This document shows, one piece after another, positions 4,990 through 19,183 of a stretch of 64,000 nucleotides of DNA. Numbering within the stretch: position 1 is the stretch's first letter; every line of letters starts with the position of its first letter. The notes under the pieces are model-generated. The model saw nothing but the letters and a program-made list of their open reading frames with translations. It made no database searches and was not told the origin of the DNA. The DNA lies in IMG/VR virus record IMGVR_UViG_3300044846_005229, positions 124,001-188,000 of that record; one strand, 5' to 3'. The position numbers and the translations under genes were made by a program.

Positions 4990-5190
4990 TTAGGGGCAAT
5001 TAGGGGCAACCAGGGGACGATCACCTTTGCCCACCAGGGACTTTACCATGAGTTCAGTAAATCGCTCTTGCCTGCTGGGGCAAACTGACTGGGGGTAGCC
5101 GTCAATTGCTGCCTTTAACGAGGCAAGTTCTTGCCACTCTGCCAGGCTAATGGGGGCTGGGCCAATGGGTGCAACTTGTTGTGAATTCAT
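4990..5190 (-). CDS. conserved cyanophage small protein
   Basis: MNSQQ start, ATGA overlap with upstream gene; EW.EL..LK.AI...P.SV.P..ERFTEL pattern. Confidence 0.65.
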   Translation of the reverse strand: MNSQQVAPIGPAPISLAEWQELASLKAAIDGYPQSVCPSRQERFTELMVKSLVGKGDRPLVAPNCP

Positions 5191-5516: not shown

Positions 5517-5699
5517 TTTAGTGGGTGTTGTGGCTGCTGGGTTATGCCGTGAACCATGAGGCTAAAGGCAATCTGGTTCTGTTCTATTGTAGGGAGTTTA
5601 CCCCCAAAAGTCAATGGGTGTTGTGGGGGGGGGGGATTTCCGTAAGACTACCATAGGTGTTGTGGCTCCGAATGCAAGGGCCATGAACGCAAGTACACG

Positions 5700-5927
5700 C
5701 TACCAGTCACCTTCTCTCAAACAACGGACTATAACCGAACCGGGTCCCGCGAGTTCTAACGCAGTAGTAATTGCGTGAGTTGAGTTGTGGGCCATTATGT
5801 TGTGGATGTGCTGTCGGGTTAATGAGTAAGTTGAGTTTAAAGTTATTTCGGTTAGGACACGATAAGGGCGAAGTTTGCCAGGTGGTGTTGTGCTTCGGGT
5901 AGGTTTGCGGTTCGGTGAGTTGACCAT
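5700..5927 (-). CDS. small hypothetical protein, start uncertain
   Basis: C-terminus IMAHNSTHAITTALELAG...RCLREGDW looks coding; N-terminus overlaps repeats. Confidence 0.45.
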   Translation of the reverse strand: MVNSPNRKPTRSTTPPGKLRPYRVLTEITLNSTYSLTRQHIHNIMAHNSTHAITTALELAGPGSVIVRCLREGDW

Positions 5928-6078
5928 CGGGTGTGATGTTACAAAACTTAACATATCAGGGCGGGGAGTTTTACCATAATGAGTTAACTATCGGGTGGCA
6001 AGGAGTTTACCACGGGGGTAGTACACTTGTACTAGCTTACCCGGTGGCAATACCCGGTGGCAATACCCGGTGGCTAAC

Positions 6079-6282
6079 TCACTTGGAGCGGCGGCGCCTC
6101 AGCTCATCCCCGTAGGTGCAAGCCTCATCGCTATAGCGGCCCTCAGCAATCGGGTTCCAGCCACGCATGGCAGCCTCGGCCTGGCGACAATCTCTGGCTG
6201 CATAGGACAGCTCGGCATCGGTCATGCTGCTGGCTTTGGTGGCCCAGGCGGTGAAATCAGCGGCGGTAGCGGCGGTGGTCAT
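6079..6282 (-). CDS. cassette gene, conserved cyanophage small protein
   Basis: Own promoter at 6308; WNP..EG.YSDE..TYGDELRRR. Confidence 0.75.
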   Translation of the reverse strand: MTTAATAADFTAWATKASSMTDAELSYAARDCRQAEAAMRGWNPIAEGRYSDEACTYGDELRRRRSK

Positions 6283-6761
6283 GGTGCCCCTTGCTTGGTA
6301 CCTACATATTGTAGCACCCTGGCGGGGGCAATGTGGCCCTTGGTTCCTGGACTCGGGAAATCGTTACGGTTCGTCACATTGCCGCAGAAGTCGAAACCAT
6401 GGGAAAGCCCCGGAAACCGGGGCGGTGGAGTCATGCCAGGCGGATCAGCAAGTGGCAATCCATGCAGCCGCCTCGGCTTCGGTAAGGGGGCCAGCGATGC
6501 AGGTGCTGTCAACCTCAAAGCAGGAACGACGCTGCCACTCGTAGCCGAACCATGCGCCATCTTCCTGACGGATTGAGAAGCCGTAGCCGTTGCGGTCAAC
6601 TCGGCGGGTGGTGGCGGCGGTGGTCATGGTGCCCCTTGCTTGGTACCTACATATTGTAGCACCCTGGCGGGGGCAATGTGGCCCTTGGTTCCTGGACTCG
6701 GGAAATCGTTACGGTTCGTCACATTGCCGCAGAAGTCGAAACCATGGGAAAGCCCCGGAAA
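6269..6761 (+). repeat. 148-bp perfect direct repeat (6269-6416 and 6614-6761) containing a whole promoter module
   Basis: Base-by-base identity read from the sequence. Confidence 0.9.
6445..6627 (-). CDS. cassette gene, hypothetical
   Basis: Own promoter at 6653 (duplicated module). Confidence 0.7.
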   Translation of the reverse strand: MTTAATTRRVDRNGYGFSIRQEDGAWFGYEWQRRSCFEVDSTCIAGPLTEAEAAAWIATC

Positions 6762-6938
6762 TCACCAGCGGGCGGCCCAGACCTTAAGCTCAGCCAGGCT
6801 GTAGGTTGCCATGCAGCCAGCGAGGGTGCCATTCTCGACCCGGTGGACCCGGTACTGACCGAACCGGCGAGTAACCCTGACATCCGGGTGACTTGCGAAA
6901 AAATCTAGGATTTGATTGCTAGTGCTCAGGGTGGCCAT
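6762..6938 (-). CDS. cassette gene, 58-aa hypothetical
   Basis: MATLSTSNQILDFFASHPDVRVTRRFGQYRVHRVENGTLAGCMATYSLAELKVWAARW; promoter at 6965; below ORF-track cutoff. Confidence 0.65.
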   Translation of the reverse strand: MATLSTSNQILDFFASHPDVRVTRRFGQYRVHRVENGTLAGCMATYSLAELKVWAARW

Positions 6939-7207
6939 TTGCCGTTTGGTTGGTTGGCTTCGTAATTATAGCATGGTTGCCGGGGGTGCCGACGGGTTTG
7001 CCGGGGTTTTGTTACGTTTAGTAATAATGCCATGGGAGTAATACAAACGTATTAGCTCACCCGGTGAGGTTGCGCTTCGGGTGAGTTGTAACAAAACTTA
7101 ATAATCCGGTGAGTTTATTATCCGGTGGCGACACAAAACTTAACACATTGGGGCAGGGAGTTTAACGGCAATGAGTTAAGGGACCTAGTAGCAAGAACCT
7201 AGATAGC

Positions 7208-7230
7208 AAAAAGCCCCGGCGAACCGGGGC
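7208..7230 (-). terminator. rho-independent terminator, UUCG loop
   Basis: GCCCCGG-TTCG-CCGGGGC-TTTTT just after stop at 7243; near-copies at 10689-10712 and 14014-14037. Confidence 0.85.
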
Positions 7231-7242
7231 AGGGCCAGATAC

Positions 7243-7428
7243 TCAGCGGCGGTAGCAAAGTTCCCGGTGGAGTGCATTGGACCTTGCGATGCAGCCCCCA
7301 AGGCTCTCGGGGCGGATCCTGGCTTCGATGCCAAGGCGACGGATGGCCCGGTGGATTTCAGGGTCCGTCATCAGGGTGGCCTCTTTCTGCCAAGCGGTGA
7401 GATCAGCGATGGTAGCGACGGCGGGCAT
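7243..7428 (-). CDS. cassette gene, weak paralog of 6079-6282
   Basis: AT.AD.TAW...A..MTD.E shared N-terminus; own promoter at 7455. Confidence 0.65.
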   Translation of the reverse strand: MPAVATIADLTAWQKEATLMTDPEIHRAIRRLGIEARIRPESLGGCIARSNALHRELCYRR

Positions 7429-8028
7429 GGTGCGTTCCGGTGCGGTACTTACATATTATATGCCAGGGATGGATGGGTGTCAAGGCGCCGGTCGGTGAGT
7501 TTACGCCCTGTAACAATGCCGGTCGGCGAGTTTACGCTCCGGGTGTCGCGCTTCGGGTGAGTTGACTATCAGGTGGCGACACAAAACTTAACATATCAGG
7601 GCAGGGAGTTTGGCGGCAATGAGTTTACTGTCAGGTGGCGACACAAAACTTAACACACCCTGGCAAGGAGTAATACACTTGTACTAGCTTGCCCGGTGTT
7701 GCTCTCCGGTGTTGCTCTCCGATGAGTTGACTATCGGTGAGTTGACTACCGGGTGCGATGTTACAAAACTTTACATATCAGGGCAGGGAGTAATACACTT
7801 GTACTATCTCACCCGGCGGCAGTTTGACCGCAATGAGTTTACCGCGAGAGTAATACACTTGTACTATCTCACCCGGTGACAATACCCGATGGCAATACCC
7901 GATGCCAATGAGTTCGACCGCAATGAGTTTACCACGGGAGTAATGCTCTTGTACTATCTTCCCCAGTGGCAATACCCATGAAAAAACCCCGGCAAGGCCA
8001 GGGCAAGGTGGGAATTGGGCCGGAACCC

Positions 8029-8265
8029 CTAGGTAAGGGTCTCGATAGACTCGATAGACTGGCTCAGCATGCCCCTCAGCTGACGCAGGGTATCAAGGGT
8101 TTCATGGGCAGGGCGGAAGATGGCTTTGCCATCGGGGCGGTACACTTCCCTCAGGGACCCAATCAGGTTGGCCAGGGCGATTCCTTCGGTGACGGCCTTC
8201 TCCACGATTCGATCCACTTCGGCGGCGACGGGGGTGGTTACGGTGGCGGTAGTGGTGGTGGGCAT
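8029..8265 (-). CDS. cassette gene, hypothetical
   Basis: Start MPTTTT at 8265; promoter at 8293. Confidence 0.7.
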   Translation of the reverse strand: MPTTTTATVTTPVAAEVDRIVEKAVTEGIALANLIGSLREVYRPDGKAIFRPAHETLDTLRQLRGMLSQSIESIETLT

Positions 8266-8338
8266 GGGTGACTCCCGGTTGGTGACTCTGTAATTGTACC
8301 ATACGGCAGGCAGGGGGCGCAAGCCCCCCTTGGGCCAC

Positions 8339-8500
8339 TCATTCCCAGGTGGCACTAGCGACCCAGCCAGGGATCCCCCGGTCGGCAAAGCCGGAATTCA
8401 TCCGCTCTGCTTCGGCGATAGCGGCTTTCTTGTTAGGGGTCTCGTATAAGGTCTCGCGACCGGTTTCGGTGCAGAGGATGACGCGGTAGATGCGGGACAT
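8339..8500 (-). CDS. cassette gene, 53-aa hypothetical
   Basis: MSRIYRVILCTETGRETLYETPNKKAAIAEAERMN...; promoter at 8526. Confidence 0.6.
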   Translation of the reverse strand: MSRIYRVILCTETGRETLYETPNKKAAIAEAERMNSGFADRGIPGWVASATWE

Positions 8501-8662
8501 TTGCGGTTTGGTGCGGTACCTCGTAATTATAGCATGGTGCCATGGGGGTGGTCAACTCCTGGACTTTAATGGCTGGCAAGCATGGTGCCAACGGAACCGT
8601 CAACCCCATGGATTCTGCGGCAGGAAGGGGGCCCGGCAGGCAACCCCCCCCCCTAGGCACCC

Positions 8663-8797
8663 TCAGGCCTCGCCCACGACAATCCAACCCTTGGGTTTCC
8701 GGCTAAGGGGGCCAGTGTAGACGACTTGCTCAAGGAAACCTTCGCGGTTGGTGCGCTCAAGCAGCCACTGGCTGGGGGTGGTGGTTTTGGTGGCCAT
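8663..8797 (-). CDS. cassette gene, 44-aa hypothetical
   Basis: MATKTTTPSQWLLERTNREGFLEQVVYTGPLSRKPKGWIVVGEA; promoter at 8836. Confidence 0.6.
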   Translation of the reverse strand: MATKTTTPSQWLLERTNREGFLEQVVYTGPLSRKPKGWIVVGEA

Positions 8798-8870
8798 TGC
8801 GGTTCGGTGGGTGACTCCCGGTTGGTGACTCTGAGATTATAGCACGGATAGGCAGGGGGCGCAAGCCCCC

Positions 8871-9086
8871 TCAGGCAGGCATCGTGAAGTATGTATCCTC
8901 TGCGTCCCATCCTTGCTGGATAAGTTCTTCAATGCCCCGCTCCCCGTCTTCCTTGGAAGGGTGCAGCCAATTCAGCTCCCAGCTCCCATCGGAGCCAACC
9001 CGGAAAGTGGCACAGACGGTACCGGGTAGGAGGTGGTAGGGGTGGCCCTCAGGGCAGTAGCAGATGGAAGGGGTGGTTGTGGCCAT
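8871..9086 (-). CDS. cassette gene, hypothetical
   Basis: Start MATTTPSICYC; consensus promoter 9118-9146. Confidence 0.7.
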   Translation of the reverse strand: MATTTPSICYCPEGHPYHLLPGTVCATFRVGSDGSWELNWLHPSKEDGERGIEELIQQGWDAEDTYFTMPA

Positions 9087-9160
9087 GGGTGGTTGCCCTT
9101 GGTTGGTTGACTCTGTGATTATAGCATGGTTCCGGGGCAGTGTCAACCCCCTAGGAACCC

Positions 9161-9625
9161 TCAAACCGCAACCACAGCAACCTTGGCAGTCTTACGGGGG
9201 GCACGCTTGCGAGCAGGGGCAGGGGCCGGTGCAGGGGCGTCGGCGGTCGCAGAGGCCTTGGTTGCCTTGGTCGTCTTAGTCGTCTTGGCGCGGCTCTTAC
9301 GGGCAGGGGCCGGTGCAGCAGCCAGCAGGGCGATAGGGCCACTTGCGGCCATCAGGACGGGAACCTCAGCGGGCACGACAATTTCCTGGAACTCAATAGC
9401 GATGCCATCGATGGCTTCAACCGTGGCCCTAGCCAGGGCAGCCAACTGATCGTTGCGGGCATCGATAGCCTCGCGGGTTTGACAACCCAGATCATAGGCA
9501 GAGTCTGCCGTGATGGTGACCACGGCGATAGCGTAAGCGATCACAATGCCAGCAATGCGGGCAGCCTTCTCAAGGGTGGGGGCCCAATCGGCTTTCAGGA
9601 TGGTTGCGATGGTGGTGGTGGCCAT
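9161..9625 (-). CDS. cassette gene with K/A/P-rich basic C-terminal tail
   Basis: PARKSRAKTTKTTKATK...PARKRAPRKTAK; TTGACA-N17-TACAAT promoter. Confidence 0.7.
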   Translation of the reverse strand: MATTTIATILKADWAPTLEKAARIAGIVIAYAIAVVTITADSAYDLGCQTREAIDARNDQLAALARATVEAIDGIAIEFQEIVVPAEVPVLMAASGPIALLAAAPAPARKSRAKTTKTTKATKASATADAPAPAPAPARKRAPRKTAKVAVVAV

Positions 9626-10039
9626 GGGTGGCGTTTCGCTTGGGACCCCTTAATTGTAAGCCATGGGTGGCCGGGTGTCAAGGTGCTGGCGGTTTTGTTT
9701 GCATTTCGTAATAATGCCAGTGGGAGTAATACAAACGTACTAGCTCACCCGGTGAGTTTGCGCTTCGGGTGTCGCGGTCCGGTGAGTTTGCCGGTCGGTG
9801 AGTTTGCGGTCCGGTGAGTTTACGCTTCGAGTGTGATGTTACAAAACTTAACACATCGGGGCAGGGAGTTTGACGGCAATGAGTTAGCCGCCCGGTGTCA
9901 ACACAAAACTTAACATTCCGGTAGCAATTTGACGGCAATGAGTTAGCTATTGGGTGTCAACACACCATGGCAGGGAGCATGTGAAACCAGCATAAAGAAA
10001 GGCCGCCGATTGGCAGCCCTTTACTATGCGGACTTTCGT

Positions 10040-10429
10040 TCACAAAGGGTTGAAATTATCATCCACATCATCCATTCTTTCAAACGTAGGGCAATGTAGC
10101 AGATTGCCACTTTGTGCATACCCGTCGATGACATATTGTGAATATTGCTTAATGTTTTGAACAGCATCTTTGCTGTCTACTGTATCCACGAACTTGCCCA
10201 TGTTATAGTATGAAATCTGATCACCATTGTGGAAGTGATAAACCCTCTTTAGAATGAGACGCATCCCACTCACAAAGAACTCCATATCGACTTGACATTC
10301 GTCCCCCACCCCAAAGTATACGGGGAATGTATACAAATCGTTAGGGGAGGGATTAGCCCAAGGGCTGGAATTTTCCCACTGAAGGGTAACTGAAGTCGTC
10401 CCACGGGAAATGATCGAGGGGGTGGGCAT
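10040..10429 (-). CDS. cassette gene, hypothetical
   Basis: Own promoter at 10453 and downstream hairpin. Confidence 0.7.
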   Translation of the reverse strand: MPTPSIISRGTTSVTLQWENSSPWANPSPNDLYTFPVYFGVGDECQVDMEFFVSGMRLILKRVYHFHNGDQISYYNMGKFVDTVDSKDAVQNIKQYSQYVIDGYAQSGNLLHCPTFERMDDVDDNFNPL

Positions 10430-10732
10430 GGTGCGTTCCGGTTGACTCTGTAATTATAGCATGGGGCGGGAGCCTGCTGTGGGTTTCCGGGAGTTTTGTT
10501 TGCATTCCGTAATAATGCCGGGTCGGTGAGTTTACGCTTCGGTAAGTTGACTATCGGGTGCGATGTTACAAAACTTAACATTCCGGTGGCAGTTTGCGGT
10601 TCGGGTGTGATGTTACAAAACTTAACACATCATGGCAGGGAGTTTGACGGCAGGGAGTTAAACCTTGAACAGCAAAAATACCGACTACAAAAAGGTCCCG
10701 GCGAACCGGGACGGGTGGGGGGGCCAAGGCCA

Positions 10733-10963
10733 TCATGCGAAGCCGTAGCGTTGCATTAGGGCCTTAGTGGCAATGCGTTCTGCCCCCGTCATGTAGTCCA
10801 ACAGGTGTTCAGCGCCGTCTGCGGAGACCTCCTCGAATGCCTCTTCTTTCTTGATTCCATAGTGGCTGGAAATGTTGCCCAGAATGTTATCCCGGGTGGC
10901 TGCATCAATCGCAACGAGGAAAACGTAGTTCAGCCTGCCCTGGGGAACGGTGGTGGTGGTCAT
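10733..10963 (-). CDS. cassette gene, hypothetical
   Basis: Start MTTTTVPQG; promoter at 10989; UUCG terminator. Confidence 0.7.
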   Translation of the reverse strand: MTTTTVPQGRLNYVFLVAIDAATRDNILGNISSHYGIKKEEAFEEVSADGAEHLLDYMTGAERIATKALMQRYGFA

Positions 10964-11297
10964 TTGCCTTTCGGTGCGGGACCCCCTAATTGTAGCACAC
11001 TGCGGGGGCCTGCTGTGGGGTGCCGGTGGTTGTCGGTAGTTTTGTTTGCGTTTTGTTACCATTGGGAATTAGCCGCCAGGAGTAATACACTTGTACTAGC
11101 TCACCCGGTGGTATAATCCCGCAGGCACTTTACGCTTCGGGTTAGTTGTAACAAAACTTAATAATCCGGTGAGTTAACTACCGGGTGCCAACACAAAACT
11201 TAACACATCGTGGCAGGGAGTTTGACCGTAATGAGTTAAACCCCCAAACAGCAAGCCCCAGCAAAGCCAGGGCAGTAGCAACAACCTGATGCAACCC

Positions 11298-11504
11298 TCA
11301 ACCTCGCGCAACCCTGGCAAAGTCCAGATCGGGATAAACCACCAGCTCCCTAGGCAGGCTGCGGGCGCGACGGGCCCAGGCGTACTCGTCGGTGTACATC
11401 GCCTCGATGCGGGCATTATCACGGGCCACGACAGCGGTGATACGCTCACGGGCGGCAGCGCGGCGGTCGGAGGCGATCTGGGCGCGGTAGGTGGTGGGGG
11501 CCAT
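11298..11504 (-). CDS. cassette gene, hypothetical
   Basis: Promoter at 11532. Confidence 0.65.
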   Translation of the reverse strand: MAPTTYRAQIASDRRAAARERITAVVARDNARIEAMYTDEYAWARRARSLPRELVVYPDLDFARVARG

Positions 11505-11888
11505 TTGCCGTTTGGTGCGGTTGACTCTGTAATTGTAGCATATGGCCGGGGGTGCTGGGTGGTGCCGGTAGGTGCCGGGGGGTTTTGTTTACGTTTGGTT
11601 GCCATTGGGGGTTAGCCGCCAGGAGTAATACACTTGTACTAGCTCACCCGGTGAGTTTACGCTTCGGGTGTGATGTTACAAAACTTAACAATCCGGTGGC
11701 AGCTTCACGGCAATGAGTTAGCTATCCGGTGTCAACACAAAACTTAACATTTCTGGGGTAGCTTCACGGCAATGAGTTAGCTATCCGGTGTCAACACAAA
11801 ACTTAACACATCAAGGCAGGGAGTTTGACGACAAAGAGTTATCGCACCGGCCAGCAAAAAGCCCCCGGATGATGGAGGCAGTATGGGC

Positions 11889-12179
11889 TCAATCAACGAT
11901 AGCTGACCACTCGTTGGCATCAATGCCAGGGTGGACGTGTGCCTCGTAAAGACGGGTGCCGTCAGTGAGCTGGGCGACACAGAGGTAGTGATCTGTTTGG
12001 GCCATGCAACCAGCAATGTGGAGAACCGCGCCGGTTGCGGCGTGGCGAAAATCGGCAAGGTCGCTGATATAAGTGGTGCCGATGACAGCAGATTGCTTGC
12101 GCATGTACGGGGTGCTGGCACGCTCGGCAGCCTGCTCGGCGATGGTCAGAACCTCTTCGTCGGTGAGGGTGGTGGCCAT
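11889..12179 (-). CDS. cassette gene, hypothetical
   Basis: Start MATTLTDEE; promoter at 12208. Confidence 0.7.
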   Translation of the reverse strand: MATTLTDEEVLTIAEQAAERASTPYMRKQSAVIGTTYISDLADFRHAATGAVLHIAGCMAQTDHYLCVAQLTDGTRLYEAHVHPGIDANEWSAIVD

Positions 12180-12256
12180 GGGTGACTCCCGGTTGGTGAC
12201 TCTGTGATCATAGCATGGATGGGCCAGGGAACGCAAGCCCCCTAACCCCGTGGCGC

Positions 12257-12418
12257 TCAGGCGACTCTGACGTGGAGGCCCCGAGCGATCTCTTTAAGTT
12301 CGGACTCAGAGCGGAAAACCAGCATGAGCCAGAAATCTCCGGTGACTTCAAGATTGTTAGCCTTGATGACGTTCATGATGTCGTGGCGGAGGGCTTGCTT
12401 GCGTTGGGTGGTGGTCAT
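12257..12418 (-). CDS. cassette gene, conserved cyanophage small protein
   Basis: Start MTTTQRKQ; LEVTGDFWLMLVFRSESEL. Confidence 0.7.
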   Translation of the reverse strand: MTTTQRKQALRHDIMNVIKANNLEVTGDFWLMLVFRSESELKEIARGLHVRVA

Positions 12419-12468
12419 GGGTGGCTCCCGGTTGGTTGACTCTGTAATTATAGCACGGGGCCGTAGAG

Positions 12469-12702
12469 TCAGCAATAAGCGTTTAGAGATCCGTATGGAT
12501 TGGCCGAAAGATTGAAAAAACCCTCGTAGCTTTCCGCTTCAGTGCGTGCCATTGGCATCAATGGAGGGGGTGACTGAGAGGAGCCCCACTGGTGGCGATC
12601 ATTTGCTCTAGCGAGGTGATGATGATGCTTAATCCTGGAGCGTGTTTCACTCCAGTAGCAAGCGGTTCCATGAAAGTAGCCGTAGCCGGTCGAATTGGTC
12701 AT
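12469..12702 (-). CDS. cassette gene, hypothetical
   Basis: Start MTNSTGYGY; promoter at 12735. Confidence 0.6.
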   Translation of the reverse strand: MTNSTGYGYFHGTACYWSETRSRIKHHHHLARANDRHQWGSSQSPPPLMPMARTEAESYEGFFNLSANPYGSLNAYC

Positions 12703-12757
12703 GGGTGGTGATGCCGGTAGTTTGGGACTCCGCAATTATAGCATGAATGGCAGGGGG

Positions 12758-12964
12758 TTAGTCGTCGTTCCAGCATTGGCACCTAGGGTCAAGTACCCCA
12801 CAGCCCCGGCACGCCATCGAGATGAGACGCAATCGCTCGTCATCGCTTAGCTGTGCAAACTTAGCGGCAGCAGCCCCAAACTTACTTTCAACCGGCTTCC
12901 ATGACCCGTCTGGAGTGGTGCGAAACCAGAGAATGCCGCCCTCAAACTTCTCTTCGTAATACAT
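12758..12964 (-). CDS. cassette gene with C-terminal Cys cluster
   Basis: CRGCGVLDPRCQCWNDD; promoter at 12989. Confidence 0.7.
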   Translation of the reverse strand: MYYEEKFEGGILWFRTTPDGSWKPVESKFGAAAAKFAQLSDDERLRLISMACRGCGVLDPRCQCWNDD

Positions 12965-13087
12965 AGTGCCTTCGGGGTGGTGACTCTGTAATTATAGCAG
13001 GTTGGGGGCCGTAGCTGTGGGCGCTGTTGAGTTTTGTAACAATCGATGCGGAAAGGGGTCACCGGCTGGCAACCCCCCCCTTAGCAA

Positions 13088-13360
13088 TCAGCCCATCCCC
13101 GCAACCCTAGCAAGCTCTTGCATGGTGCAGGGGGAAGAACCCATCAGAGGCAAAATCGCAACTTCCATATGCGAATGCAGATTCTGCCAGCGAATAGCAG
13201 CAGCAGCAGCATCCTCAATGGACCAGCCTTCTACGGGGCCACCCTGCAGGAACCAGCGGCGCTGATGGGCTGTGGGGGTCTCAGGCTTGACGCGAGCCCA
13301 CAGGCGGTAGGTTGTTGCCGGGGCGGCGGGTTGCATCGGGGCGGTGGTTGCAGTAGCCAT
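13088..13360 (-). CDS. cassette gene, hypothetical
   Basis: Start MATATTAP; promoter at 13389. Confidence 0.65.
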   Translation of the reverse strand: MATATTAPMQPAAPATTYRLWARVKPETPTAHQRRWFLQGGPVEGWSIEDAAAAAIRWQNLHSHMEVAILPLMGSSPCTMQELARVAGMG

Positions 13361-13501
13361 CGTTGCGGTGTCGGTTGGGGACCTCGTAATTATAGCACAG
13401 GGGGCCAGAGAACACAATCCCTAACCCCTCGTGACGGCAGGCAGGGGGCCAACACAGTGTCAACCCCATGGCATTGTCAACCCTTGGGCATTGTCAACCC
13501 C

Positions 13502-13741
13502 TCAAACGGCAGCCAGGGCATCCAGGGCGGCAGCCAGGGCGGTGGAGGGGAAGTAGCGGTCCTCACCTTCGCAGATATCCGACAGGCACCAGCGGAAACC
13601 ACGACGGGTCGCATCAGCGGTCAGGATGTAGTCGGCACCTTTGAAGAAGGCACGGGATCCTTCGCTAAATTCCACACCGGCAGGGAGGCCTTTGCGGATG
13701 GCAGCGTTGATCATGGCGGAGGGGGTTGTGAGGCAGACCAT
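13502..13741 (-). CDS. cassette gene, hypothetical
   Basis: Promoter at 13768. Confidence 0.65.
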   Translation of the reverse strand: MVCLTTPSAMINAAIRKGLPAGVEFSEGSRAFFKGADYILTADATRRGFRWCLSDICEGEDRYFPSTALAAALDALAAV

Positions 13742-14064
13742 TTGCCGGGGGGGTGCGTTACCTCGTAATTATAGCACAGGGCCGAGGGTGCTGGGGGGTT
13801 GCCGGTAGGTGCCGGTGGTTTTGTTTACATCTGGTAACATTGCCGGTCAATGAGTTTGCAGTTCGGTGAGTTAACTATCGGGTGTGATGTTACATAACTT
13901 AACATACTGGGGCAGGGAGTTTAACGGCAATGAGTTTACTGCCAGGTGGCGACACAAAACTTAACACATCAAGGCAGGGAGTTTGACGACAAAGAGTTAT
14001 TGCACCGGCCAACAAAAAAAACCCCGGCGAACCGGGGCAGGGGCAGGGCAGTATCGGGGGGGTA

Positions 14065-14277
14065 TCAGCCTACGCCTTGTCCCCAGACGGTTAAGCAGCG
14101 GTCTCGGGCGACCCGGTAGGATTCAAGCTCCCTGCGGTTGAGATCCAACATGGGGCGATAACCGTTGATACCAGCCTCACATGCCGCTTTCCAAGCAGCC
14201 TCAGCACGGTCGATAGCGCATTGGGCGATATTAGCCCAAGCATCGGCGGAGATGGTTGCGGTGGTGGTGGGGGCCAT
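14065..14277 (-). CDS. cassette gene, hypothetical
   Basis: Start MAPTTT; promoter at 14302; UUCG terminator. Confidence 0.65.
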   Translation of the reverse strand: MAPTTTATISADAWANIAQCAIDRAEAAWKAACEAGINGYRPMLDLNRRELESYRVARDRCLTVWGQGVG

Positions 14278-14419
14278 TGCCGTTTGGTGCGGTACCCTGA
14301 AATTATAGCATGGTGCAGGGGCAATTGCGGGGTGCCGTTTGATGACGTTTGGTAACAATGCCGTTTGAGTAGTAGGTTTGTACTAGCTTGCCCGTGGTTT
14401 GTTTGCGGTCCGGGTGTGA

Positions 14420-14660
14420 TGTTACAAAACTTAACATTCCGATGGCAGTTTGTGAGTCTGTATTAACTACCCGGTGGCAACACAAAACTTAACATTCCGA
14501 TGGCAGTTTGTGAGTCTGTATTAACTACCCGGTGGCAACACAAAACTTAACATTCCGATGGCAGTTTGACGGCAAGGAGTTTACCATCAGGTGCCAACAC
14601 AAAACTTAACATTCCGATGGCAGTTTGACGGCAAGGAGTTTACCATCAGGTGGCAACACC
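14420..14660 (+). repeat. tandem amplification of the HLR1-like spacer unit (two 59-bp and two shorter copies)
   Basis: acaaaacttaacattccgatggcagtttg repeated four times. Confidence 0.9.
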
Positions 14661-14717
14661 ACGGCAAGGAGTAATACACTTGCACAAGTGTGTCCGGTGG
14701 TAATACCAGGTGTCAAT

Positions 14718-14793
14718 ATGGGGACTGTGGGGATCGAACCCAAACCTCCGCCGATTTATGAGATCGGAGCATTCACCAGATTGCTAAGCCCCC
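14718..14793 (-). tRNA. tRNA-Met/Ile2 (anticodon CAT), possibly degenerate
   Basis: Anticodon arm CCGAT-CTCATAA-ATCGG, GGTTCGATCC T-loop; G1 mismatch, weak T-stem, no CCA. Confidence 0.7.
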
Positions 14794-14822
14794 GTGTTTT
14801 CAGTTTGCCCTAGTTTGAGTTT

Positions 14823-14938
14823 TGTTGCGCTTCGTGATGATAGGCACGGCATGTTGCGCTTCGTGATGATGGGCATGGCATGTTGCGCTTCGTGGCGATA
14901 GGCACGGCATGTTGCGCTTCGTGATGGTAGGCATGGTG
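14823..14938 (+). repeat. 4 x 29-bp tandem repeat resembling the -10/leader module
   Basis: tgttgcgcttcgtgatgataggcacggca and variants at 14823, 14852, 14881, 14910. Confidence 0.85.
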
Positions 14939-14957
14939 CTGTTACGTTCTGCAACAT

Positions 14958-15215
14958 TCAAACCATTCTCACCATCGGGTGAAGATGCGAGCCGGTTTTC
15001 GGGTCTGGCGGATAGATTCGGAGGGTGATAACTTCGTCACCATACGCTTCGATGACATCCTCCAGACTGGGGAACCAGTCTCCAGTGTAGCCGTCTATGA
15101 CGCAGAATTCGTAGTCGTCGCCATCTGCATAACCATCGGCAAGAACCGGCGTGATATTGGCAGGCAGATCGCCCAACCTGGTGAGGATGGCATCCAGGGT
15201 AGTTGCGGTGACCAT
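14958..15215 (-). CDS. cassette gene, acidic hypothetical
   Basis: DGYADGDDYEF; promoter at 15241. Confidence 0.7.
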   Translation of the reverse strand: MVTATTLDAILTRLGDLPANITPVLADGYADGDDYEFCVIDGYTGDWFPSLEDVIEAYGDEVITLRIYPPDPKTGSHLHPMVRMV

Positions 15216-15320
15216 TTGCGGTTTGGGTAGTGACTCTGTAAGTATAGCATAGGGCCAACGGAACCGTCAACCCCTGGATTTAATCCTGCGGCAGGCAAGG
15301 GGCCAACACAGTGGCAACCA

Positions 15321-15497
15321 TCACCCAATGCCTTCCCGGTCGTATTCGCCAAAGGTTGCCTCAAATTCTGCACGGTCATCGTAGAATTCAGCCTGAGCGT
15401 CGGGATCACCGTCAGCCAGGGCTTGGAGGAATTTTAGGGTATCGCCGTCAGTGGCGGTGGTGGTGGTGGCGGTAATGGTTGTTGAAGTGGGGGCCAT
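15321..15497 (-). CDS. cassette gene, 58-aa acidic protein
   Basis: MAPTSTTITATTTTATDGDTLKFLQALADGDPDAQAEFYDDRAEFEATFGEYDREGIG; promoter at 15521. Confidence 0.65.
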   Translation of the reverse strand: MAPTSTTITATTTTATDGDTLKFLQALADGDPDAQAEFYDDRAEFEATFGEYDREGIG

Positions 15498-16094
15498 TTT
15501 TTTCTCCGGGGTGTCTGTCTATTGTAGCATAGTGCTGGGGGGTTGGGGTTTGCGGGTCGGGTGCCTCGGGATGGATGCCAGGGGTTGGATTCCAGGGGTT
15601 GGATTCCAGGGGTATCGTTGACTCCTAGGGGTGAGGTGGACAGTTTGTTAAGTGTCCATCTGACCTAAAGGAGTATCGTGCCAGGGAGTTTGGTGCCCAA
15701 GGGTTAGTGCCAGTATTAGACTTTGGGTGCGTTTTATGAGTAATGTGGAACCTCAGGGTGCTTTTTGCGAGTAATGTGGAACGCCCCAAAATAAAAATCG
15801 AAAATTCAATCCTTGAGATCGACTGCAGCGGAACGGAGTTACTCCTAAAAAAATTAAAAATTTTAGGACCTAGTTGAAATCCATCCAAAAAATTCTACAT
15901 TTGAATGCATATTATGCACCCTACTACTATAATCGCATATAAATTATTTAATAGAGTGTACTTATGTTAGTTGTACAATCAATAAGTTTTTCTTATTCTT
16001 AGGTACAATCAATGAGTTAAGGGCCAGAAGACAAAAAAAAAGGGGGGATAACCCTAAGGCAATCCCCCATTCTTTGTACTAAGTTTATCGCCAA

Positions 16095-16433
16095 TCAATC
16101 ATTCTTGGCCTTCCATGCACGCAACCGGCTAATTGCCTCCTCTACGCTGCTGGCATTAGACTTGCGGAATTTGGCCGTTTTGCTATAGGAAAACATTTCA
16201 ATCTTCCCACCCCCGATGGAAAACATTGCGTAGCGGGAATTGTGGAAGATTCCGTTAATCCATTCTTCCTTAGGGTCTAGGGATACCTTGACGATTAGGG
16301 AAGCGTTTTGCTCACCGCCAAGGGTAGACCTTTGCACAGAAGAAACCGGGAAGGTGGCATTCAGGGAAGCAGCCAGGGTGTCGCGATCGGTTTCGGTCGG
16401 GATGAAGGCAGTTGCGAGGGTTGCGGTGGCCAT
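16095..16433 (-). CDS. cassette gene, hypothetical
   Basis: TTGCGC-N17-TATAAT promoter; hairpin plus T-run at 16032-16070. Confidence 0.75.
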   Translation of the reverse strand: MATATLATAFIPTETDRDTLAASLNATFPVSSVQRSTLGGEQNASLIVKVSLDPKEEWINGIFHNSRYAMFSIGGGKIEMFSYSKTAKFRKSNASSVEEAISRLRAWKAKND

Positions 16434-16511
16434 GGGGCGCTCCGGTGGGTGACCCTGTAATTATAGCACGAAAGGGAAGGGGGCGCAAGCCCCCCAACCC
16501 CCGGCCATCAC

Positions 16512-16808
16512 TCACACAGCAGGGACCCGGCTACCGGCAGCGATCACCCCTTTGCCTTTCATCTCATCCAGCAGGGTAACGAAAGCGGCAGCGATGGCGT
16601 TCTTGGTGGCACGACCGGTTAGCTCAACCCGGAAACTCCGGCAGCTGAAGGGCAGGCATGTGAACATGCTGTAGCCGGTGCGGGTCTCTACAGTGCCCTC
16701 ACTGGCAGTAACCCTAGCAGGGCGGCCAGCGGGCTTGTAGAAGGTTACCTGGAAGACAGCTCCAGGGTTGTCAAGGCTGTTCACGTAGAAGGAATTGGGG
16801 GTTGCCAT
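16512..16808 (-). CDS. cassette gene, hypothetical
   Basis: Start MATPNS; promoter at 16845. Confidence 0.7.
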   Translation of the reverse strand: MATPNSFYVNSLDNPGAVFQVTFYKPAGRPARVTASEGTVETRTGYSMFTCLPFSCRSFRVELTGRATKNAIAAAFVTLLDEMKGKGVIAAGSRVPAV

Positions 16809-16895
16809 TGCGGTTCGGGGTGGTTGCCGTTGGTTGACTCTGTAATTGTACCATACAGCAGGCAGGGGGGCGCAAGCCCCCAACCACTCAAGGCA

Positions 16896-17228
16896 TCAAA
16901 TGGCCAGGGCTCGGACGCCTATGATCTTGCCTTCCCCGTCTCTCACTACGTTCTGGGGGCCAGTATCTGGGCGGTAAAGATCGGTCCGGTTGGGGGCTGC
17001 CTGTTGAACCAACATAGAAACAACAAAAATAGTACCCTCTTCGGGATCAGGGAGATTCTCTACATCCCCAAAAGTAGTCCGGGTGACGGGGATTCCATTA
17101 ATTTTGAATACCTCTTCTGTTACTGAAGATACCCGTGCCGCAGGAGCGGTTGGGGCAATAGTAAAGACTTCTCCGTTCTCCTTGTACAGATGAAGGGGGT
17201 GGGGGGTGAGGTTGATGATGGTGGCCAT
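16896..17228 (-). CDS. cassette gene, conserved viral NLTPH-motif protein
   Basis: IINLTPH...LPDPEEGTIFVVS...VRD.EGKIIG pattern recalled from diverse viruses. Confidence 0.75.
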   Translation of the reverse strand: MATIINLTPHPLHLYKENGEVFTIAPTAPAARVSSVTEEVFKINGIPVTRTTFGDVENLPDPEEGTIFVVSMLVQQAAPNRTDLYRPDTGPQNVVRDGEGKIIGVRALAI

Positions 17229-17311
17229 TGCGGCGTTCCGGTGTGGTTGACTCTGTAATTATAGCACAAAGGGGAAGGGGGGCAACCCTAAGGCAAACCC
17301 CAGGCCATCAC

Positions 17312-17560
17312 TCACACGGCGGGCAGGTAAATCTCTAGGGTATAGGTAACCTCAGCCTCATTATAGGCAGCCAAGGTATCGGCCAGCTCCCCAAGTGACA
17401 CATAGTCGCTGTATTCACCATCATCTACAAGGAAATCGACCTCATCGCCATCGGCAGGTTCTTCCGACAGGAAGGGAGCGCAGAACGGGCTCAGCGTAAC
17501 GGGCAAGGTGGCGAGGATTTCAGCCAGGGTAGGAGCAGTGGGGGCGGTTGCGGTAGCCAT
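17312..17560 (-). CDS. cassette gene, highly acidic protein
   Basis: EEPADGDEVDFLVDDGEYSDY; no K or R in the sequence. Confidence 0.7.
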   Translation of the reverse strand: MATATAPTAPTLAEILATLPVTLSPFCAPFLSEEPADGDEVDFLVDDGEYSDYVSLGELADTLAAYNEAEVTYTLEIYLPAV

Positions 17561-17628
17561 GGTGCGGTCTCGGTGGGTGACTCTGTAATTATAGCACGAA
17601 AGGGAAGGGGGCGCAAGCCCCCCACAAG

Positions 17629-17808
17629 TTAGAATCTGATGACGGGATGGCCGGGGTCAAGAGTGTCACATGCTTCAGTTGTGAAAACCAACTTAACTTT
17701 CTGGCCAAAATGCTCATCAATTCCCTCGTCATAAACTGTAACGTTAGAGTCTAGTTGTTCATCGGTGAATTGTTGCAGTTGCTGAAGCAGTTCCCGGTAG
17801 GTAATCAT
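17629..17808 (-). CDS. conserved cyanophage small protein (59 aa)
   Basis: MITYRELLQQLQQFTDEQLDSNVTVYDEGIDEH...TLDPGHPVIRF, hand-translated. Confidence 0.7.
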   Translation of the reverse strand: MITYRELLQQLQQFTDEQLDSNVTVYDEGIDEHFGQKVKLVFTTEACDTLDPGHPVIRF

Positions 17809-17962
17809 TGCGGTTCGGTGTGGGACCCCTTAATTATTACACATCGGTAGGCAGAACGCAAGAGGCCGGGTCGTTTGTTTGCGTTTTGTGACAGTGCCAC
17901 GCGAGTAGTATGTTTGTACTAACTGACCCGGTATCAATACCAGTAGGCAATGAGTTTGCCTA

Positions 17963-17997
17963 AGTATAAAAAAAAGAGGGGGCTGTCAACCCCCCCT
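17963..17997 (-). terminator. terminator hairpin with embedded promoter
   Basis: AGGGGGG-TTGACAG-CCCCCCT followed by T-run; TTGACA-N16-TATACT. Confidence 0.6.
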
Positions 17998-18019
17998 AAC
18001 TCAACTATCATTCTTACCA

Positions 18020-18256
18020 TCATTCGCAAACTTTCGGTAGTACGGTACCATGCACCAAATAGCCATACCTTTCGATGCCATACTTGTGCAAAATATGCAC
18101 ATTGGGCCATGATTCGCCTTGTCCCCAAGTACCTGACTGACTCATACGCTCAAAAGCACATTCAACGCTGTTACGCAGCCAGGAATGATCGATACGGGAT
18201 GCTGATGCCGCTTGGTTGCTGCGGTAGTTGCGGTACTTGGGGGCGGGGAATGCCAT
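18020..18256 (-). CDS. cassette gene, hypothetical
   Basis: Start MAFPAPK; promoter at 18286. Confidence 0.55.
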   Translation of the reverse strand: MAFPAPKYRNYRSNQAASASRIDHSWLRNSVECAFERMSQSGTWGQGESWPNVHILHKYGIERYGYLVHGTVLPKVCE

Positions 18257-19183
18257 TGTTGCCGGTGGTTGGTTGGCTCCGTAATTATAGCACATTGCCT
18301 CGGGGGTTGGGGCCCCGGATTGCTGACTCCCAAGGTGTGGTGGACAGTTTGTAAACTGTCTATTTGACTTCGTGAGTTTGACTTTTAGGGTTTGATTCTG
18401 GGGTGTGTTTTCGGGGTCAATGTGGAATCTCAGAGTGCTTTTTGCAGGTAATGTAGAATGCCTAATTTGAAAAGTCTGAAAGTCAACCGCTGAGATCGAC
18501 TGCAGGGCAACGGAGTTACTCCTAAAAAAATTAAAAATTTTAGGACCTAGTGAAAAACGATCCAAAAAATTCTACATTTGAATGCATATTCTGCACCCTA
18601 GGGTCTTTATATACACTTTTTCGCGAATATATGTATAATAAGTGTTTATTCTATGTTGTTATAGTTTGTTGTTGATGAGTCCAAGTAATAAACAACTGGG
18701 ATACGGTCTCAACAGTCTCAGTTAAGTATCGGAATGATGTCACACTTCAAGAGTAAGCAGATGGGTGCGTTTTTCCAGTAATGTAGAAACCCGGGGTGCA
18801 TTTTGCCGGTAATGTAGAATGCCCCAAATTAAAAACCTGAAATTCAATCCCTGAGATCGACTGCAGGGGAACGGAGTTACTCCTAAAATTTTTGAATTTT
18901 TTAGGACCTAATGGAAAACCATCCAAAAAATTCTACATTTGAATGCAAATTCTGCACCCTACTACTATATACTCGCGTAAAAATTATTTAATAGAAGACT
19001 CTTATCTTAATGTCTAGACAGATAAGTAATTCTTATCAATCTAATCCCCCATCAAACCGCAATGTTGTGGGCTATTCGAGGATGCTAACCGGAGTCTCAC
19101 CAAATAGCAAAGGGGCCGATGCCTAAGCACCAACCCCCAAACATTAAACTAAGGTCAATCTAAGGCCAAACCAAAGTCCGAAT

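What the first reader, a model, noticed from the sequence alone, without database searches (positions are those of the whole stretch)
6020..17920. About 12 cyanobacterial SOS (LexA)-box-like palindromes interleaved with the HLR1-like repeats
Seen: AGTACACTTGTACT at 6020-6033 (within TAGTAC-ACTT-GTACTA). One-mismatch AATACACTTGTACT at 7672, 7792, 7852, 11084, 11627. Weaker copies at 7040, 7942, 9728, 14371, 14673, 17907. Those next to promoters lie about 75-100 bp upstream of the start, too far for simple occlusion, and four cluster at 7670-7955 away from any promoter. Known: the cyanobacterial LexA consensus is AGTACWNWTGTACT. Inference: a second host regulator is targeted by the same spacers. 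Titrating LexA would derepress recA and repair genes useful for recombination-dependent replication, or the boxes tie early genes to UV damage.
Basis: partly seen in the sequence, partly recalled or inferred. Interest (0 to 1): 0.72.

Follow-up and report, generated by a model that had tools for sequence, protein, structure and literature searches.

The report
LexA-operator look-alikes in cyanophage early spacers
A 279-kb freshwater cyanophage carries 12 copies of a short DNA module whose core closely matches the SOS-repressor (LexA) binding site of picocyanobacteria, placed in non-coding spacers upstream of early promoters, so the phage probably ties itself to the host's DNA-damage regulator, though binding is untested.

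Summary
All 12 sites exist at the stated coordinates, all in one orientation. They occur nowhere else in the 279-kb phage genome. They are copies of one oriented module of about 30 nt, not 12 independent events.

Read on the gene-sense (minus) strand, the dominant "one-mismatch" form is AGTACAAGTGTATT. That is nearly the autoregulatory box GGTACAAATGTATT found upstream of lexA in 18 Cyanobiaceae genomes. The pattern RGTACNNNNGTAYY occurs only 5-10 times per host-family genome, including upstream of recA, umuD-like genes and lexA. It occurs 7 times in 6 kb of this phage.

Across 34 copies in six related phage sequences the palindrome arms are conserved and the centre varies. There are no compensatory changes, which fits a protein site rather than an RNA hairpin.

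The boxes lie in terminator-to-promoter spacers. Six are centred about -82 to -109 from predicted early-gene start sites, with variable spacing. The others lie deeper in longer arrays.

Host LexA binding is plausible (about 0.5) but unproven. Cis-regulation and titration cannot be told apart. The modules also serve as recombination points.

The parts
6017..6046 (+). Module copy. Core at 6020-6033 is AGTACACTTGTACT, the only perfect 7+2+7 palindrome (TAGTACA-CT-TGTACTA). It lies inside the array at 5880-6075.
7037..7066 (+). Module copy, type B centre. Core at 7040-7053 is AATACAAACGTATT. Promoter-proximal: centre about -88 from the predicted start site of the promoter at 6965-6973(-).
7669..7698 (+). 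Module copy. Core at 7672-7685 is AATACACTTGTACT (gene-sense AGTACAAGTGTATT). Directly preceded by an HLR1-like module.
7789..7818 (+). Module copy. Core at 7792-7805 is AATACACTTGTACT. Directly preceded by an HLR1-like module.
7849..7878 (+). Module copy. Core at 7852-7865 is AATACACTTGTACT. Followed by tandem GCAATACCCGRTG units.
7939..7968 (+). Degenerate module copy. Core at 7942-7955 is AATGCTCTTGTACT. Lies just after the minus-strand terminator at 8004-7986.
9725..9754 (+). Module copy, type B centre. Core at 9728-9741 is AATACAAACGTACT (gene-sense AGTACGTTTGTATT, which fits the host pattern). Promoter-proximal to TTGACA-17-TACAAT at 9681-9653(-).
11081..11110 (+). Consensus module copy. 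Core at 11084-11097. Promoter-proximal: centre about -108 from the predicted start site of the promoter at 10989-10997(-).
11624..11653 (+). Consensus module copy. Core at 11627-11640. Promoter-proximal: centre about -108 from the predicted start site of the promoter at 11532-11540(-).
14368..14397 (+). Degenerate module copy. Core at 14371-14384 is AGTAGGTTTGTACT. Promoter-proximal to the promoter at 14302-14310(-).
14670..14699 (+). Variant copy. Core at 14673-14686 is AATACACTTGCACA, forming a shifted palindrome ACACTTG-CA-CAAGTGT. Lies next to tRNA-Met at 14719-14793(-).
17904..17933 (+). Degenerate copy. Core at 17907-17920 is AGTATGTTTGTACT. It corresponds to a fusion of two separate boxes present in the related contig L087. 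Promoter-proximal to TGTAATAAT at 17833-17841(-).
7484..7985 (-). Longest non-coding array. It runs from a terminator to a promoter and holds four boxes, HLR1-like modules and GAGTTKAC...CGGTG units.
7455..7483 (-). Consensus sigma-70-type promoter TTGACA-17-TATAAT (12/12) downstream of the four-box array. It precedes the 61-aa ORF at 7243-7428.
6965..6973 (-). Extended -10 (TGCTATAAT) early promoter. It is one of about 40 on the minus strand between window positions 6300 and 40000.
7986..8004 (-). Intrinsic-terminator-like hairpin plus T-run closing the upstream gene. Similar ones at 7213-7230, 9998-10021, 10695-10712, 11255-11273, 11861-11879, 14021-14038 and 17975-17997 each open an array.
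7010..7025 (-). Promoter-proximal A-rich direct-repeat block (ATTACTAAACGTAACA, HLR1-like in gene-sense orientation) between the box and the -10. It is conserved in all six promoter-proximal architectures.

Best explanation
The palindromes are the core of a discrete, oriented module of about 22-30 bp. In gene-sense it reads (G)AG-n-TAGTAC-NNNN-GTAYTACTC, followed on the + strand by CACCCGGTG. The module acts as a double-stranded DNA protein-binding operator, and the most likely reader is the host's LexA.

Shown:
- The phage is a 279-kb freshwater cyanophage whose genes all run on the minus strand.
- Its early region is a chain of small ORFs, each driven by a host-type extended -10 promoter.
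- About ten of these promoters are preceded by untranslated terminator-to-promoter spacers built from short repeated modules.
- The LexA-like module is one of those modules.
- In half of all copies it sits directly upstream of an A-rich, HLR1-like direct repeat that abuts the promoter.
- Its core matches the LexA operator seen upstream of lexA, recA and umuD-like genes in Cyanobiaceae.

Inferred:
- Host LexA occupies these sites on the incoming genome.
- From about -82 to -109 (and from extra distal copies, perhaps by cooperative binding or looping) it modulates the adjacent early promoters, most likely damping them.
- LexA cleavage after DNA damage, or after infection-induced RecA activation, then changes early-gene output.
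- As a by-product, replicated phage DNA multiplies LexA sites and could drain LexA.

Independently of binding, the repeated modules act as crossover points that shuffle early-gene cassettes.

The confidence given (0.35) is for this cis-regulatory LexA reading. Together with the decoy rival, the probability that host LexA binds at all is about 0.5.
For: 1. Match to real host-family operators. In 18 of 30 Cyanobiaceae lexA loci the pattern RGTACNNNNGTAYY lies about 35-50 nt upstream of the LexA domain, in gene-sense orientation, with consensus GGTACAAATGTATT. The phage's dominant gene-sense form AGTACAAGTGTATT differs only at position 1 and one central base, and has the same GTAC/GTATT asymmetry.

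2. The pattern is rare and SOS-linked in hosts. There are 5-10 distinct sites per 2.4-3.9 Mb genome. These include sites upstream of recA in G012, G018 and G054, of umuD-like S24 genes in G054 and G039, and of lexA. This agrees with Li et al. 2010.

3. The phage is enriched. It has 7 sites in window 6020-11640 against 0.65 expected, and only one other site in the remaining 215 kb. 26 of 34 copies in six related phage sequences fit the pattern.

4. The conservation profile matches that of host operators. The arms (AGTAC, GTA-Y-T) are invariant or nearly so, and the central 3-4 nt vary (AAGT, GTTT, ATTT, AAGC and others). Host sites often share the flanks (GC)TAGTAC...GTACTAG(C).

5. It behaves as a sequence element, not a structure. 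There are 0 compensatory pairs and covariation is no better than shuffles. Hairpin energies are not significant. Rfam finds nothing. The sites lie after terminators and before promoters.

6. The module is found in at least 5 different flanking contexts yet keeps its sequence. It holds a conserved place upstream of the promoter-proximal block in six G000 promoters.

7. Host plausibility. The DNA polymerase is 54.6% identical to that of Synechococcus phage S-CBWM1. The CysRS is of cyanobacterial type. The phage occurs in lake-water metagenomes. lexA was found in 79 of 81 Cyanobiaceae genomes sampled. The phage has no LexA or S24 protein of its own.
Against: - No binding data exist.
- The host is inferred only to family level.
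- The geometry is not that of a canonical LexA repressor site. No box overlaps a -35, -10 or start site. Box-to--10 spacing varies (61, 61, 66, 70, 87, 87 nt), so helical phasing is not kept.
- The module has invariant positions outside the LexA 14-mer (ACTC on one side, AG on the other, plus CCCGGTG) that host operators lack. A different or additional reader is therefore possible.
- All copies descend from one module, so their number is not independent evidence. A single founding resemblance has roughly a 1-5% chance probability by my hand estimate.
- 8 of 34 copies have lost the pattern.
- One orthologous pair differs at 5 of 14 core positions while the flanks are nearly identical (G000 17904 against L087 box at 5018-5047), which suggests weak constraint at some sites.
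- The nearest cultured relative, S-CBWM1, has no such boxes in its first 50 kb, which includes its small-gene region.
Confidence: 0.35

Rival explanations
1. LexA decoy or titration. The boxes do bind host LexA, but their purpose is to soak it up. As the genome replicates, hundreds to thousands of sites drain LexA and derepress host recA, umuDC and other SOS genes to the phage's benefit. Position relative to phage promoters is then irrelevant.
For: - One phage genome carries 7 strict and 12 total sites, against 5-10 strict sites in a whole host-family genome.
- Four to five copies sit deep in arrays, 230-500 bp from any predicted start site.
- Spacing to promoters is not phased.
- No RecA homologue was detected in the phage.
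- HLR1-like modules are multiplied in the same spacers, which suits a general 'sponge'.
Against: - Half of all copies occupy one conserved slot right upstream of the promoter-proximal block, which a pure decoy does not need.
- The dominant form copies the asymmetric lexA-gene operator rather than the symmetric recA-type site. A decoy would be expected to favour the strongest site.
- Twelve sites on a single incoming genome cannot titrate an abundant repressor, so any effect would come only late.
- No expression or binding data exist.
Confidence: 0.15
2. The module is an operator for an unidentified phage-encoded dimeric DNA-binding protein, for example an early/middle switch factor. Its resemblance to the LexA box is coincidental or reflects a similar winged-helix reader.
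For: - Conservation extends beyond the LexA 14-mer. T...A, G...C and A...T pairs flank the core, with a one-base offset, and CCCGGTG follows. These positions are not conserved in host operators.
- The module is confined to this phage lineage and to its early spacers.
- The other array modules (GAGTTKAC...CGGTG, GCAATACCCGGTG) have no known host reader.
Against: - No LexA-like, S24 or other recognisable DNA-binding protein was found among the proteins tested. Pfam and PHROGS found nothing informative for 10 small early proteins.
- The match to host operators covers every position that is invariant in the hosts, including the Y at position 13 and part of the flanks.
- The sites lie upstream of early promoters, which must work before any phage protein is made.
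Confidence: 0.2
3. There is no sequence-specific reader. The module is one of several short repeats spread by recombination and slippage in hyperplastic early spacers (PeSL-like shuffling substrate), and it resembles a LexA box by chance.
For: - A G000 box is a fusion of two boxes of a related contig, with the crossover inside the TAGTAC arm.
- Closely related genomes differ by cassette insertions and deletions bounded by the repeated promoter, terminator and array modules.
- Many alternative joints appear at these repeats in lake metagenome contigs.
- Some copies are decaying.
- All copies share descent, so one lucky founder (about 1-5%) would suffice.
Against: - Within the module the positions that match the LexA operator arms are the best conserved, while the centre drifts. 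Neutral repeats would not show this.
- Two centre sub-families (AAGT and GTTT) keep the same arms in several genomes.
- The module keeps sharp boundaries in five or more flanking contexts.
Confidence: 0.12
4. The palindrome forms a hairpin in minus-strand RNA or in single-stranded DNA, for example as a processing, termination or replication signal.
For: On the gene-sense strand every copy can pair at the polymorphic position (25 G:U, 6 G:C, 2 A:U), whereas the + strand would have A:C there. Minus-strand folds are slightly better than + strand folds.
Against: - No pair changes on both sides, and covariation equals the shuffles.
- Fold z-scores are only -0.9 to -1.7 on the gene-sense strand in three of four copies and about 0 in the fourth.
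- There is no Rfam match.
- The sites lie downstream of intrinsic terminators and upstream of promoters, so they are probably little transcribed.
- The Y at that position is also what host LexA operators show.
Confidence: 0.04

Closest known systems
Cyanobacterial LexA (SOS) operators: AGTACWNWTGTACT (Li et al. 2010, PMC3091678) and RGTACNNNDGTWCB (Mazon et al., as cited there)
   Same: - It is a 14-bp imperfect palindrome with GTAC and GTAY arms and a free centre.
- The dominant phage form nearly equals the lexA-gene operator of Cyanobiaceae.
- The flanks TAG/CTA are shared with many host sites.
   Different: - It lies on a phage, in 12 copies within 12 kb.
- It is centred at -82 to -109 or further from predicted start sites, rather than overlapping the promoter.
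- It is embedded in a longer oriented module with extra invariant bases.
- Binding is untested.
Host transcription-factor sites recruited by cyanophages: NtcA sites and Pho boxes in T4-like cyanomyoviruses (Sullivan et al. 2010, PMC3037559), and HLR1 motifs reported in cyanophage genomes (Riediger et al. 2019, PMC6525291)
   Same: A lytic-type cyanophage appears to use operators of a host global regulator in front of its own genes. HLR1-like modules sit in the same spacers.
   Different: - The regulator would be LexA. The papers found here did not report this for cyanophages (LexA has 0 occurrences in PMC3037559).
- The sites come as multi-copy modular arrays, not as single promoter elements.
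LexA-controlled switches of temperate phages, such as GIL01 (PMC6182141), and CTXphi and coliphage 186 tum (from my own knowledge)
   Same: A phage genome carries LexA boxes so that host DNA damage feeds into phage gene expression.
   Different: - In those phages one or two boxes overlap a specific promoter in a lysogeny switch.
- Here no lysogeny module was looked for or seen.
- The boxes are distal, numerous and linked to many early promoters.
PeSL (promoter-early stem-loop) cassettes of T4-like phages (PMC2839356, PMC4122927)
   Same: - Small early ORFs are each flanked by a conserved stem-loop and early promoter.
- Related genomes differ by cassette swaps at these repeats.
- One crossover is seen inside a box.
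   Different: - The phage is not T4-like. It has a PolG-like DNA polymerase and its nearest relative is S-CBWM1.
- PeSLs are not described as carrying arrays of operator-like modules between terminator and promoter.

Membership tests
Cyanobacterial LexA operator (SOS box) | 14-bp imperfect palindrome fitting AGTACWNWTGTACT or RGTACNNNDGTWCB | tested here: met
   One copy is exact and five have 1 mismatch. Seven of 12 copies in the window, and 26 of 34 in relatives, fit the host-derived pattern RGTACNNNNGTAYY. Five window copies are degenerate.
Cyanobacterial LexA operator (SOS box) | The same motif stands upstream of SOS genes (lexA, recA, umuD) in the host clade | tested here: met
   Found upstream of lexA in 18 of 30 Cyanobiaceae loci. 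Also found upstream of recA, umuD-like and lexA genes in G012, G018, G039 and G054.
Cyanobacterial LexA operator (SOS box) | The host encodes LexA | tested here: inconclusive
   lexA is present in 79 of 81 sampled Cyanobiaceae genomes. The actual host is only inferred.
Cyanobacterial LexA operator (SOS box) | The operator overlaps or abuts the regulated promoter or start site (repressor geometry) | tested here: not met
   Box centres lie about -82 to -109, or 230-500 bp, upstream of predicted start sites, and spacing is variable. Li et al. list predicted boxes up to -172 from start codons, so this weakens but does not exclude membership.
Cyanobacterial LexA operator (SOS box) | Specific binding by LexA and a DNA-damage-dependent change in expression | not testable with these tools
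   This needs EMSA or footprinting and infection or reporter assays. The complex-prediction tool does not fold protein-DNA jobs.
PeSL-like mobile regulatory cassettes | Composite stem-loop plus early promoter flanking small ORFs in a hyperplastic region | tested here: met
   A GGGGGCTTGCGCCCCC hairpin lies directly before TGCTATAAT at several genes. About 40 such promoters are present.
PeSL-like mobile regulatory cassettes | Insertions, deletions and swaps between close relatives are bounded by the repeats | tested here: met
   G000 and G001 are 88-95% identical, with cassette rearrangements in window 5000-20000. A crossover lies inside a box.
PeSL-like mobile regulatory cassettes | Belongs to T4-like myoviruses | tested here: not met
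   The DNA polymerase is PolG-like and nearest to that of S-CBWM1. The region therefore works like PeSLs but is not a member.
Structured RNA element | Compensatory base changes or significant folding energy | tested here: not met
   There are 0 double-sided changes. Fold z-scores range from about -1.7 to +1.6. No Rfam match was found.

The most novel reading that the evidence does not exclude
The spacers are purpose-built 'operator sponges'. In this reading, dense, recombining arrays of mimics of at least two host global-regulator sites (LexA SOS boxes and RpaB HLR1 repeats, plus modules for unknown readers) on a jumbo cyanophage capture host regulators as the genome replicates. They would rewire the host's DNA-damage and light or redox programmes without any phage-encoded regulator.
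Probability: 0.12. Interest if true: 0.8.

Novelty: new variant of a known kind. Interest (0 to 1): 0.55.

Why it matters
Cyanophages are known to borrow host nutrient regulators (NtcA, PhoB) to time their genes. A link to the SOS repressor LexA has not, to my knowledge, been described for them, and the literature searches here did not find one.

If host LexA binds these modules, early gene expression of an abundant freshwater jumbo cyanophage would be coupled to host DNA damage such as UV. Alternatively, the phage would manipulate the SOS response by site titration. Either would bear on how sunlight and viral lysis interact in lakes.

The modules also give a clean, testable case of operator mimicry. 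A 30-bp element with two natural centre variants and several naturally degraded copies can serve as built-in controls.

Tried and rejected
1. RNA or ssDNA hairpin. Folding of four copies on both strands gave non-significant z-scores. Pair counting on 34 copies gave no compensatory change. Rfam found only tRNA-Met.

2. Plus-strand promoters overlapping the box. The scan proposes TTAACA-18-TACACT at 7650-7679 and 7770-7799 (9/12 matches). Only the few copies that directly follow an HLR1-like module have this, and type-B copies lose the -10 T. I rejected it as a general explanation.

3. NtcA site. By inspection GTA...TAC in the module is spaced by 9, not the 8 required by GTA-N8-TAC (motif as).

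4. Phage-encoded LexA, S24 or RecA. None was found. Pfam and PHROGS were uninformative for 10 early proteins.

5. Closest cultured relative, S-CBWM1. There was no nucleotide similarity to the arrays. Its first 50 kb holds no boxes and one match to the early-promoter motif, no more than shuffles allow.

6. Transcription evidence. One metatranscriptome (X24) holds contigs of a relative. Contigs carry no strand, DNA carry-over cannot be excluded, and depth over the repeats is summed. The result is inconclusive.

7. LexA dimer plus DNA complex prediction. The job was not folded for protein-DNA input, so it gives no evidence either way.

8. The Python machine was lost. Position-weight-matrix scoring, likelihood ratios and custom permutation tests were therefore not done. 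The chance estimates given are hand calculations.

9. Most of the 120 metagenome hits to the 15-base pattern were single chance matches. Only L045, L087, L107 and L132 are relatives.

Full report
WHAT THE WINDOW IS. The window is bases 124,001-188,000 of a 279,339-bp IMG/VR virus record with direct terminal repeats. All large ORFs lie on the minus strand. The record encodes a PolG-like family-A DNA polymerase that is 54.6% identical to that of Synechococcus phage S-CBWM1, whose host is Synechococcus sp. CBW1002. More distant matches are S-TIM5, A-HIS1/2 and Mic1. It also encodes a CysRS whose best cellular relatives are cyanobacterial at 47-50% identity, a pol III beta clamp, pentapeptide-repeat proteins and tRNAs. 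Near-identical DNA is held by more than 20 lake-water metagenome runs. It is therefore a freshwater jumbo cyanophage. A picocyanobacterial (Cyanobiaceae) host is likely, but this is inferred.

THE OBSERVATION. The 12 sites are copies of one oriented module of about 30 nt, AGTAATACACTTGTACTAGCTCACCCGGTG. All are on the + strand and all lie inside window 6017-17933. There are none elsewhere in the 279 kb. Shuffles give 0.19 expected matches against 7 observed for the published consensus at up to 1 mismatch. Because the copies share descent, the count by itself shows duplication rather than 12 independent hits.

CONTEXT. Between window positions about 6,300 and 40,000 there are roughly 40 minus-strand extended -10 promoters, TGCTATAAT followed by a conserved TACAGAGTCAACC leader. 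Each stands in front of a small ORF, and several are directly preceded by a GGGGGCTTGCGCCCCC hairpin. About ten of these promoters are instead preceded by 130-500-bp non-coding spacers. Each spacer starts right after an intrinsic-terminator-like hairpin plus T-run, or after tRNA-Met, and ends at the next promoter. The spacers are mosaics of short modules:
- GAGTTKAC-N4-CGGTG units at 16-nt period.
- GCAATACCCGGTG tandems.
- About 22 HLR1-like GTTACAAAACTTAACA units, often at 58-62-nt period.
- The LexA-like module.

Six window copies (7037, 9725, 11081, 11624, 14368, 17904) share one architecture. In order it runs box, 12-16 nt, an A-rich direct repeat (gene-sense TTAC-AAAC-G-TAAC-AAAAC, itself HLR1-like), a GC-rich stretch of variable length, the -10, the leader and the ATG. 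Box centres fall about -82 to -109 from predicted start sites. The spacing (61-87 nt to the -10) is not phased. The four copies at 7669-7968 lie 190-480 bp upstream of a perfect TTGACA-17-TATAAT promoter at 7483-7455(-).

IS IT LexA-LIKE? Their table also lists GGTACAAATGTATT upstream of lexA in marine Synechococcus and Prochlorococcus. I tested this directly. lexA is present in 79 of 81 sampled genomes of the family that contains Prochlorococcus, Synechococcus and Cyanobium. In 18 of the 30 lexA loci fetched, RGTACNNNNGTAYY lies about 35-50 nt upstream of the LexA domain, always in gene-sense orientation, with consensus GGTACAAATGTATT.

Read on the phage's gene-sense (minus) strand, the dominant "one-mismatch" variant is AGTACAAGTGTATT. 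That is the same operator with the same strong/weak half-site asymmetry. The type-B variant reads AGTACGTTTGTATT and also fits.

In five host-family genomes the pattern is rare, with 5-10 distinct sites per 2.4-3.9 Mb, fewer than a reversed control pattern. It marks recA (G012, G018, G054), umuD-like S24 genes (G054, G039) and lexA. The phage has 7 strict sites in 6 kb against 0.65 expected, and one more in the other 215 kb. Many host sites carry the flanks (GC)TAGTAC...GTACTAG(C). These are the phage's flanks on one side.

COMPARATIVE EVIDENCE. Six related sequences carry 34 copies, all in the same orientation relative to the early genes:
- This genome.
- A 53.8-kb IMG/VR fragment that is 88-95% identical and syntenic (G001).
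- Four metagenome contigs (L045, L087, L107, L132).

A seventh sequence (L023) has the orthologue of the 6017 copy with AATAC in place of AGTAC. In the 34-copy alignment the best conserved columns are T-AGTAC and GTA-Y-T-A, while the 3-4 central columns vary. This is the same profile as host operators. 26 of the 34 copies fit the host pattern. The module keeps sharp boundaries in at least five different upstream contexts, so it is a discrete unit.

Against a pure LexA reading, positions outside the 14-mer (ACTC on one side, AG plus one free base on the other, then CCCGGTG) are equally conserved and are not seen in host operators.

STRUCTURE OR SEQUENCE? On the gene-sense strand the polymorphic pair is always pairable (G:U, G:C, A:U). 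However, there is no double-sided change, covariation equals the shuffles, fold energies are unremarkable and Rfam finds nothing. The location between terminators and promoters also argues against an RNA role. The element behaves like a double-stranded DNA protein site.

RECOMBINATION. The box at 17904 equals the left part of one L087 box joined to the right part of a second L087 box 122 nt away, with the crossover in the TAGTAC arm. G000 and G001 differ by cassette insertions and deletions bounded by the repeated modules. Lake metagenome contigs show many alternative joints at them. Whatever else they do, the modules act as shuffling points in the manner of T4-type PeSLs.

MECHANISM. Steps that are shown:
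- A discrete, conserved, palindromic module.
- A close match to the operator that marks SOS genes in the probable host family.
- Placement in non-coding upstream spacers of host-type early promoters.
- No phage LexA, S24 or RecA.

Steps that are inferred:
- Host LexA binds the module.
- Binding modulates the neighbouring early promoters from a distal position, possibly together with RpaB at the adjacent HLR1-like repeats. Distal HLR1 positions are activating in Synechocystis.
- LexA cleavage changes that input.
- Replication multiplies the sites enough to drain LexA.

I put about 0.5 on LexA binding at all. Of that, about 0.35 goes to a mainly cis-regulatory role and about 0.15 to a mainly decoy role. 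I put 0.2 on a phage-encoded reader, 0.12 on no specific reader and 0.04 on a hairpin role.

LIMITS. The Python machine was lost, so no weight-matrix scoring or custom statistics could be run. The protein-DNA complex job was not folded. The single RNA run is uninformative about transcription of the arrays. The host is not identified below family level.

Noticed in passing
window 5938-14611 (+ strand), e.g. 5938, 9838, 10565, 10612, 11675, 14421: There are about 22 copies of an HLR1-like direct repeat, GTTACAAAACTTAACA (8+2+8 layout as for RpaB sites), against 0.7 expected. They are often at 58-62-nt period inside the same spacers. A further HLR1-like block in gene-sense orientation sits at about -50 to -67 of the array-bearing promoters.
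   Followed up: partly
window 6300-40000, minus strand (e.g. 6973, 8534, 9126, 10461, 12455, 16468, 17596, 23156): There are about 40 extended -10 promoters, TGCTATAAT, with a conserved leader TACAGAGTCAACC and mostly no -35. Several directly follow a GGGGGCTTGCGCCCCC hairpin. This is a PeSL-like early-gene architecture in a phage that is not T4-like.
   Followed up: partly
window 9762-9839, 10506-10567, 13830-13891 and others: Units of the form GAGTTKAC-N4-CGGTG repeat at a 16-nt period, and there are 13-nt tandems GCAATACCCGGTG and TTGCTCTCCGGTG. CTCACCCGGTGAG next to many boxes is itself a 6-1-6 palindrome. No reader is known for any of these.
   Followed up: no
window 6273-6426 and 6618-6812: This is a tandem duplication of a promoter plus leader plus the upstream gene end. 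The same 40-nt upstream sequence occurs at the promoters at 6316 and 6661.
   Followed up: no
window 15724-15931, 18401-18608, 18762-18969, and about 21800, 22380, 25300, 25900, 30120: A repeat of about 200-330 nt is present in at least 8 copies across the early region of this phage, and also in the relative G001.
   Followed up: no
window 14719-14793 (-): tRNA-Met lies directly upstream (in gene-sense) of an array. In the relatives L087 and L132, and in G001 at a similar sequence not checked with a tRNA finder, a box also abuts what looks like the same tRNA's 3' end.
   Followed up: no
window about 30000-32000: Cumulative GC skew peaks here (rising over 1-30 kb and falling afterwards) although all genes stay on the minus strand. 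This may be a replication origin or terminus. G+C is 51-59% in window 6-18 kb against 41-49% over most of the window beyond 32 kb.
   Followed up: no
L154 (CALRKZ020000018.1, labelled as a Mesorhizobium MAG): This is the best cellular hit to the phage CysRS (58% identity, above all cyanobacteria). It may be a related phage contig binned into a bacterial MAG.
   Followed up: no
Host-family genomes G012, G018, G039, G054, G083: The pattern RGTACNNNNGTAYY is 2-5 times rarer than its reversed control in four of the five genomes (about 1.8 times in the fifth). This suggests avoidance of GTAC-containing words or of spurious LexA sites.
   Followed up: no
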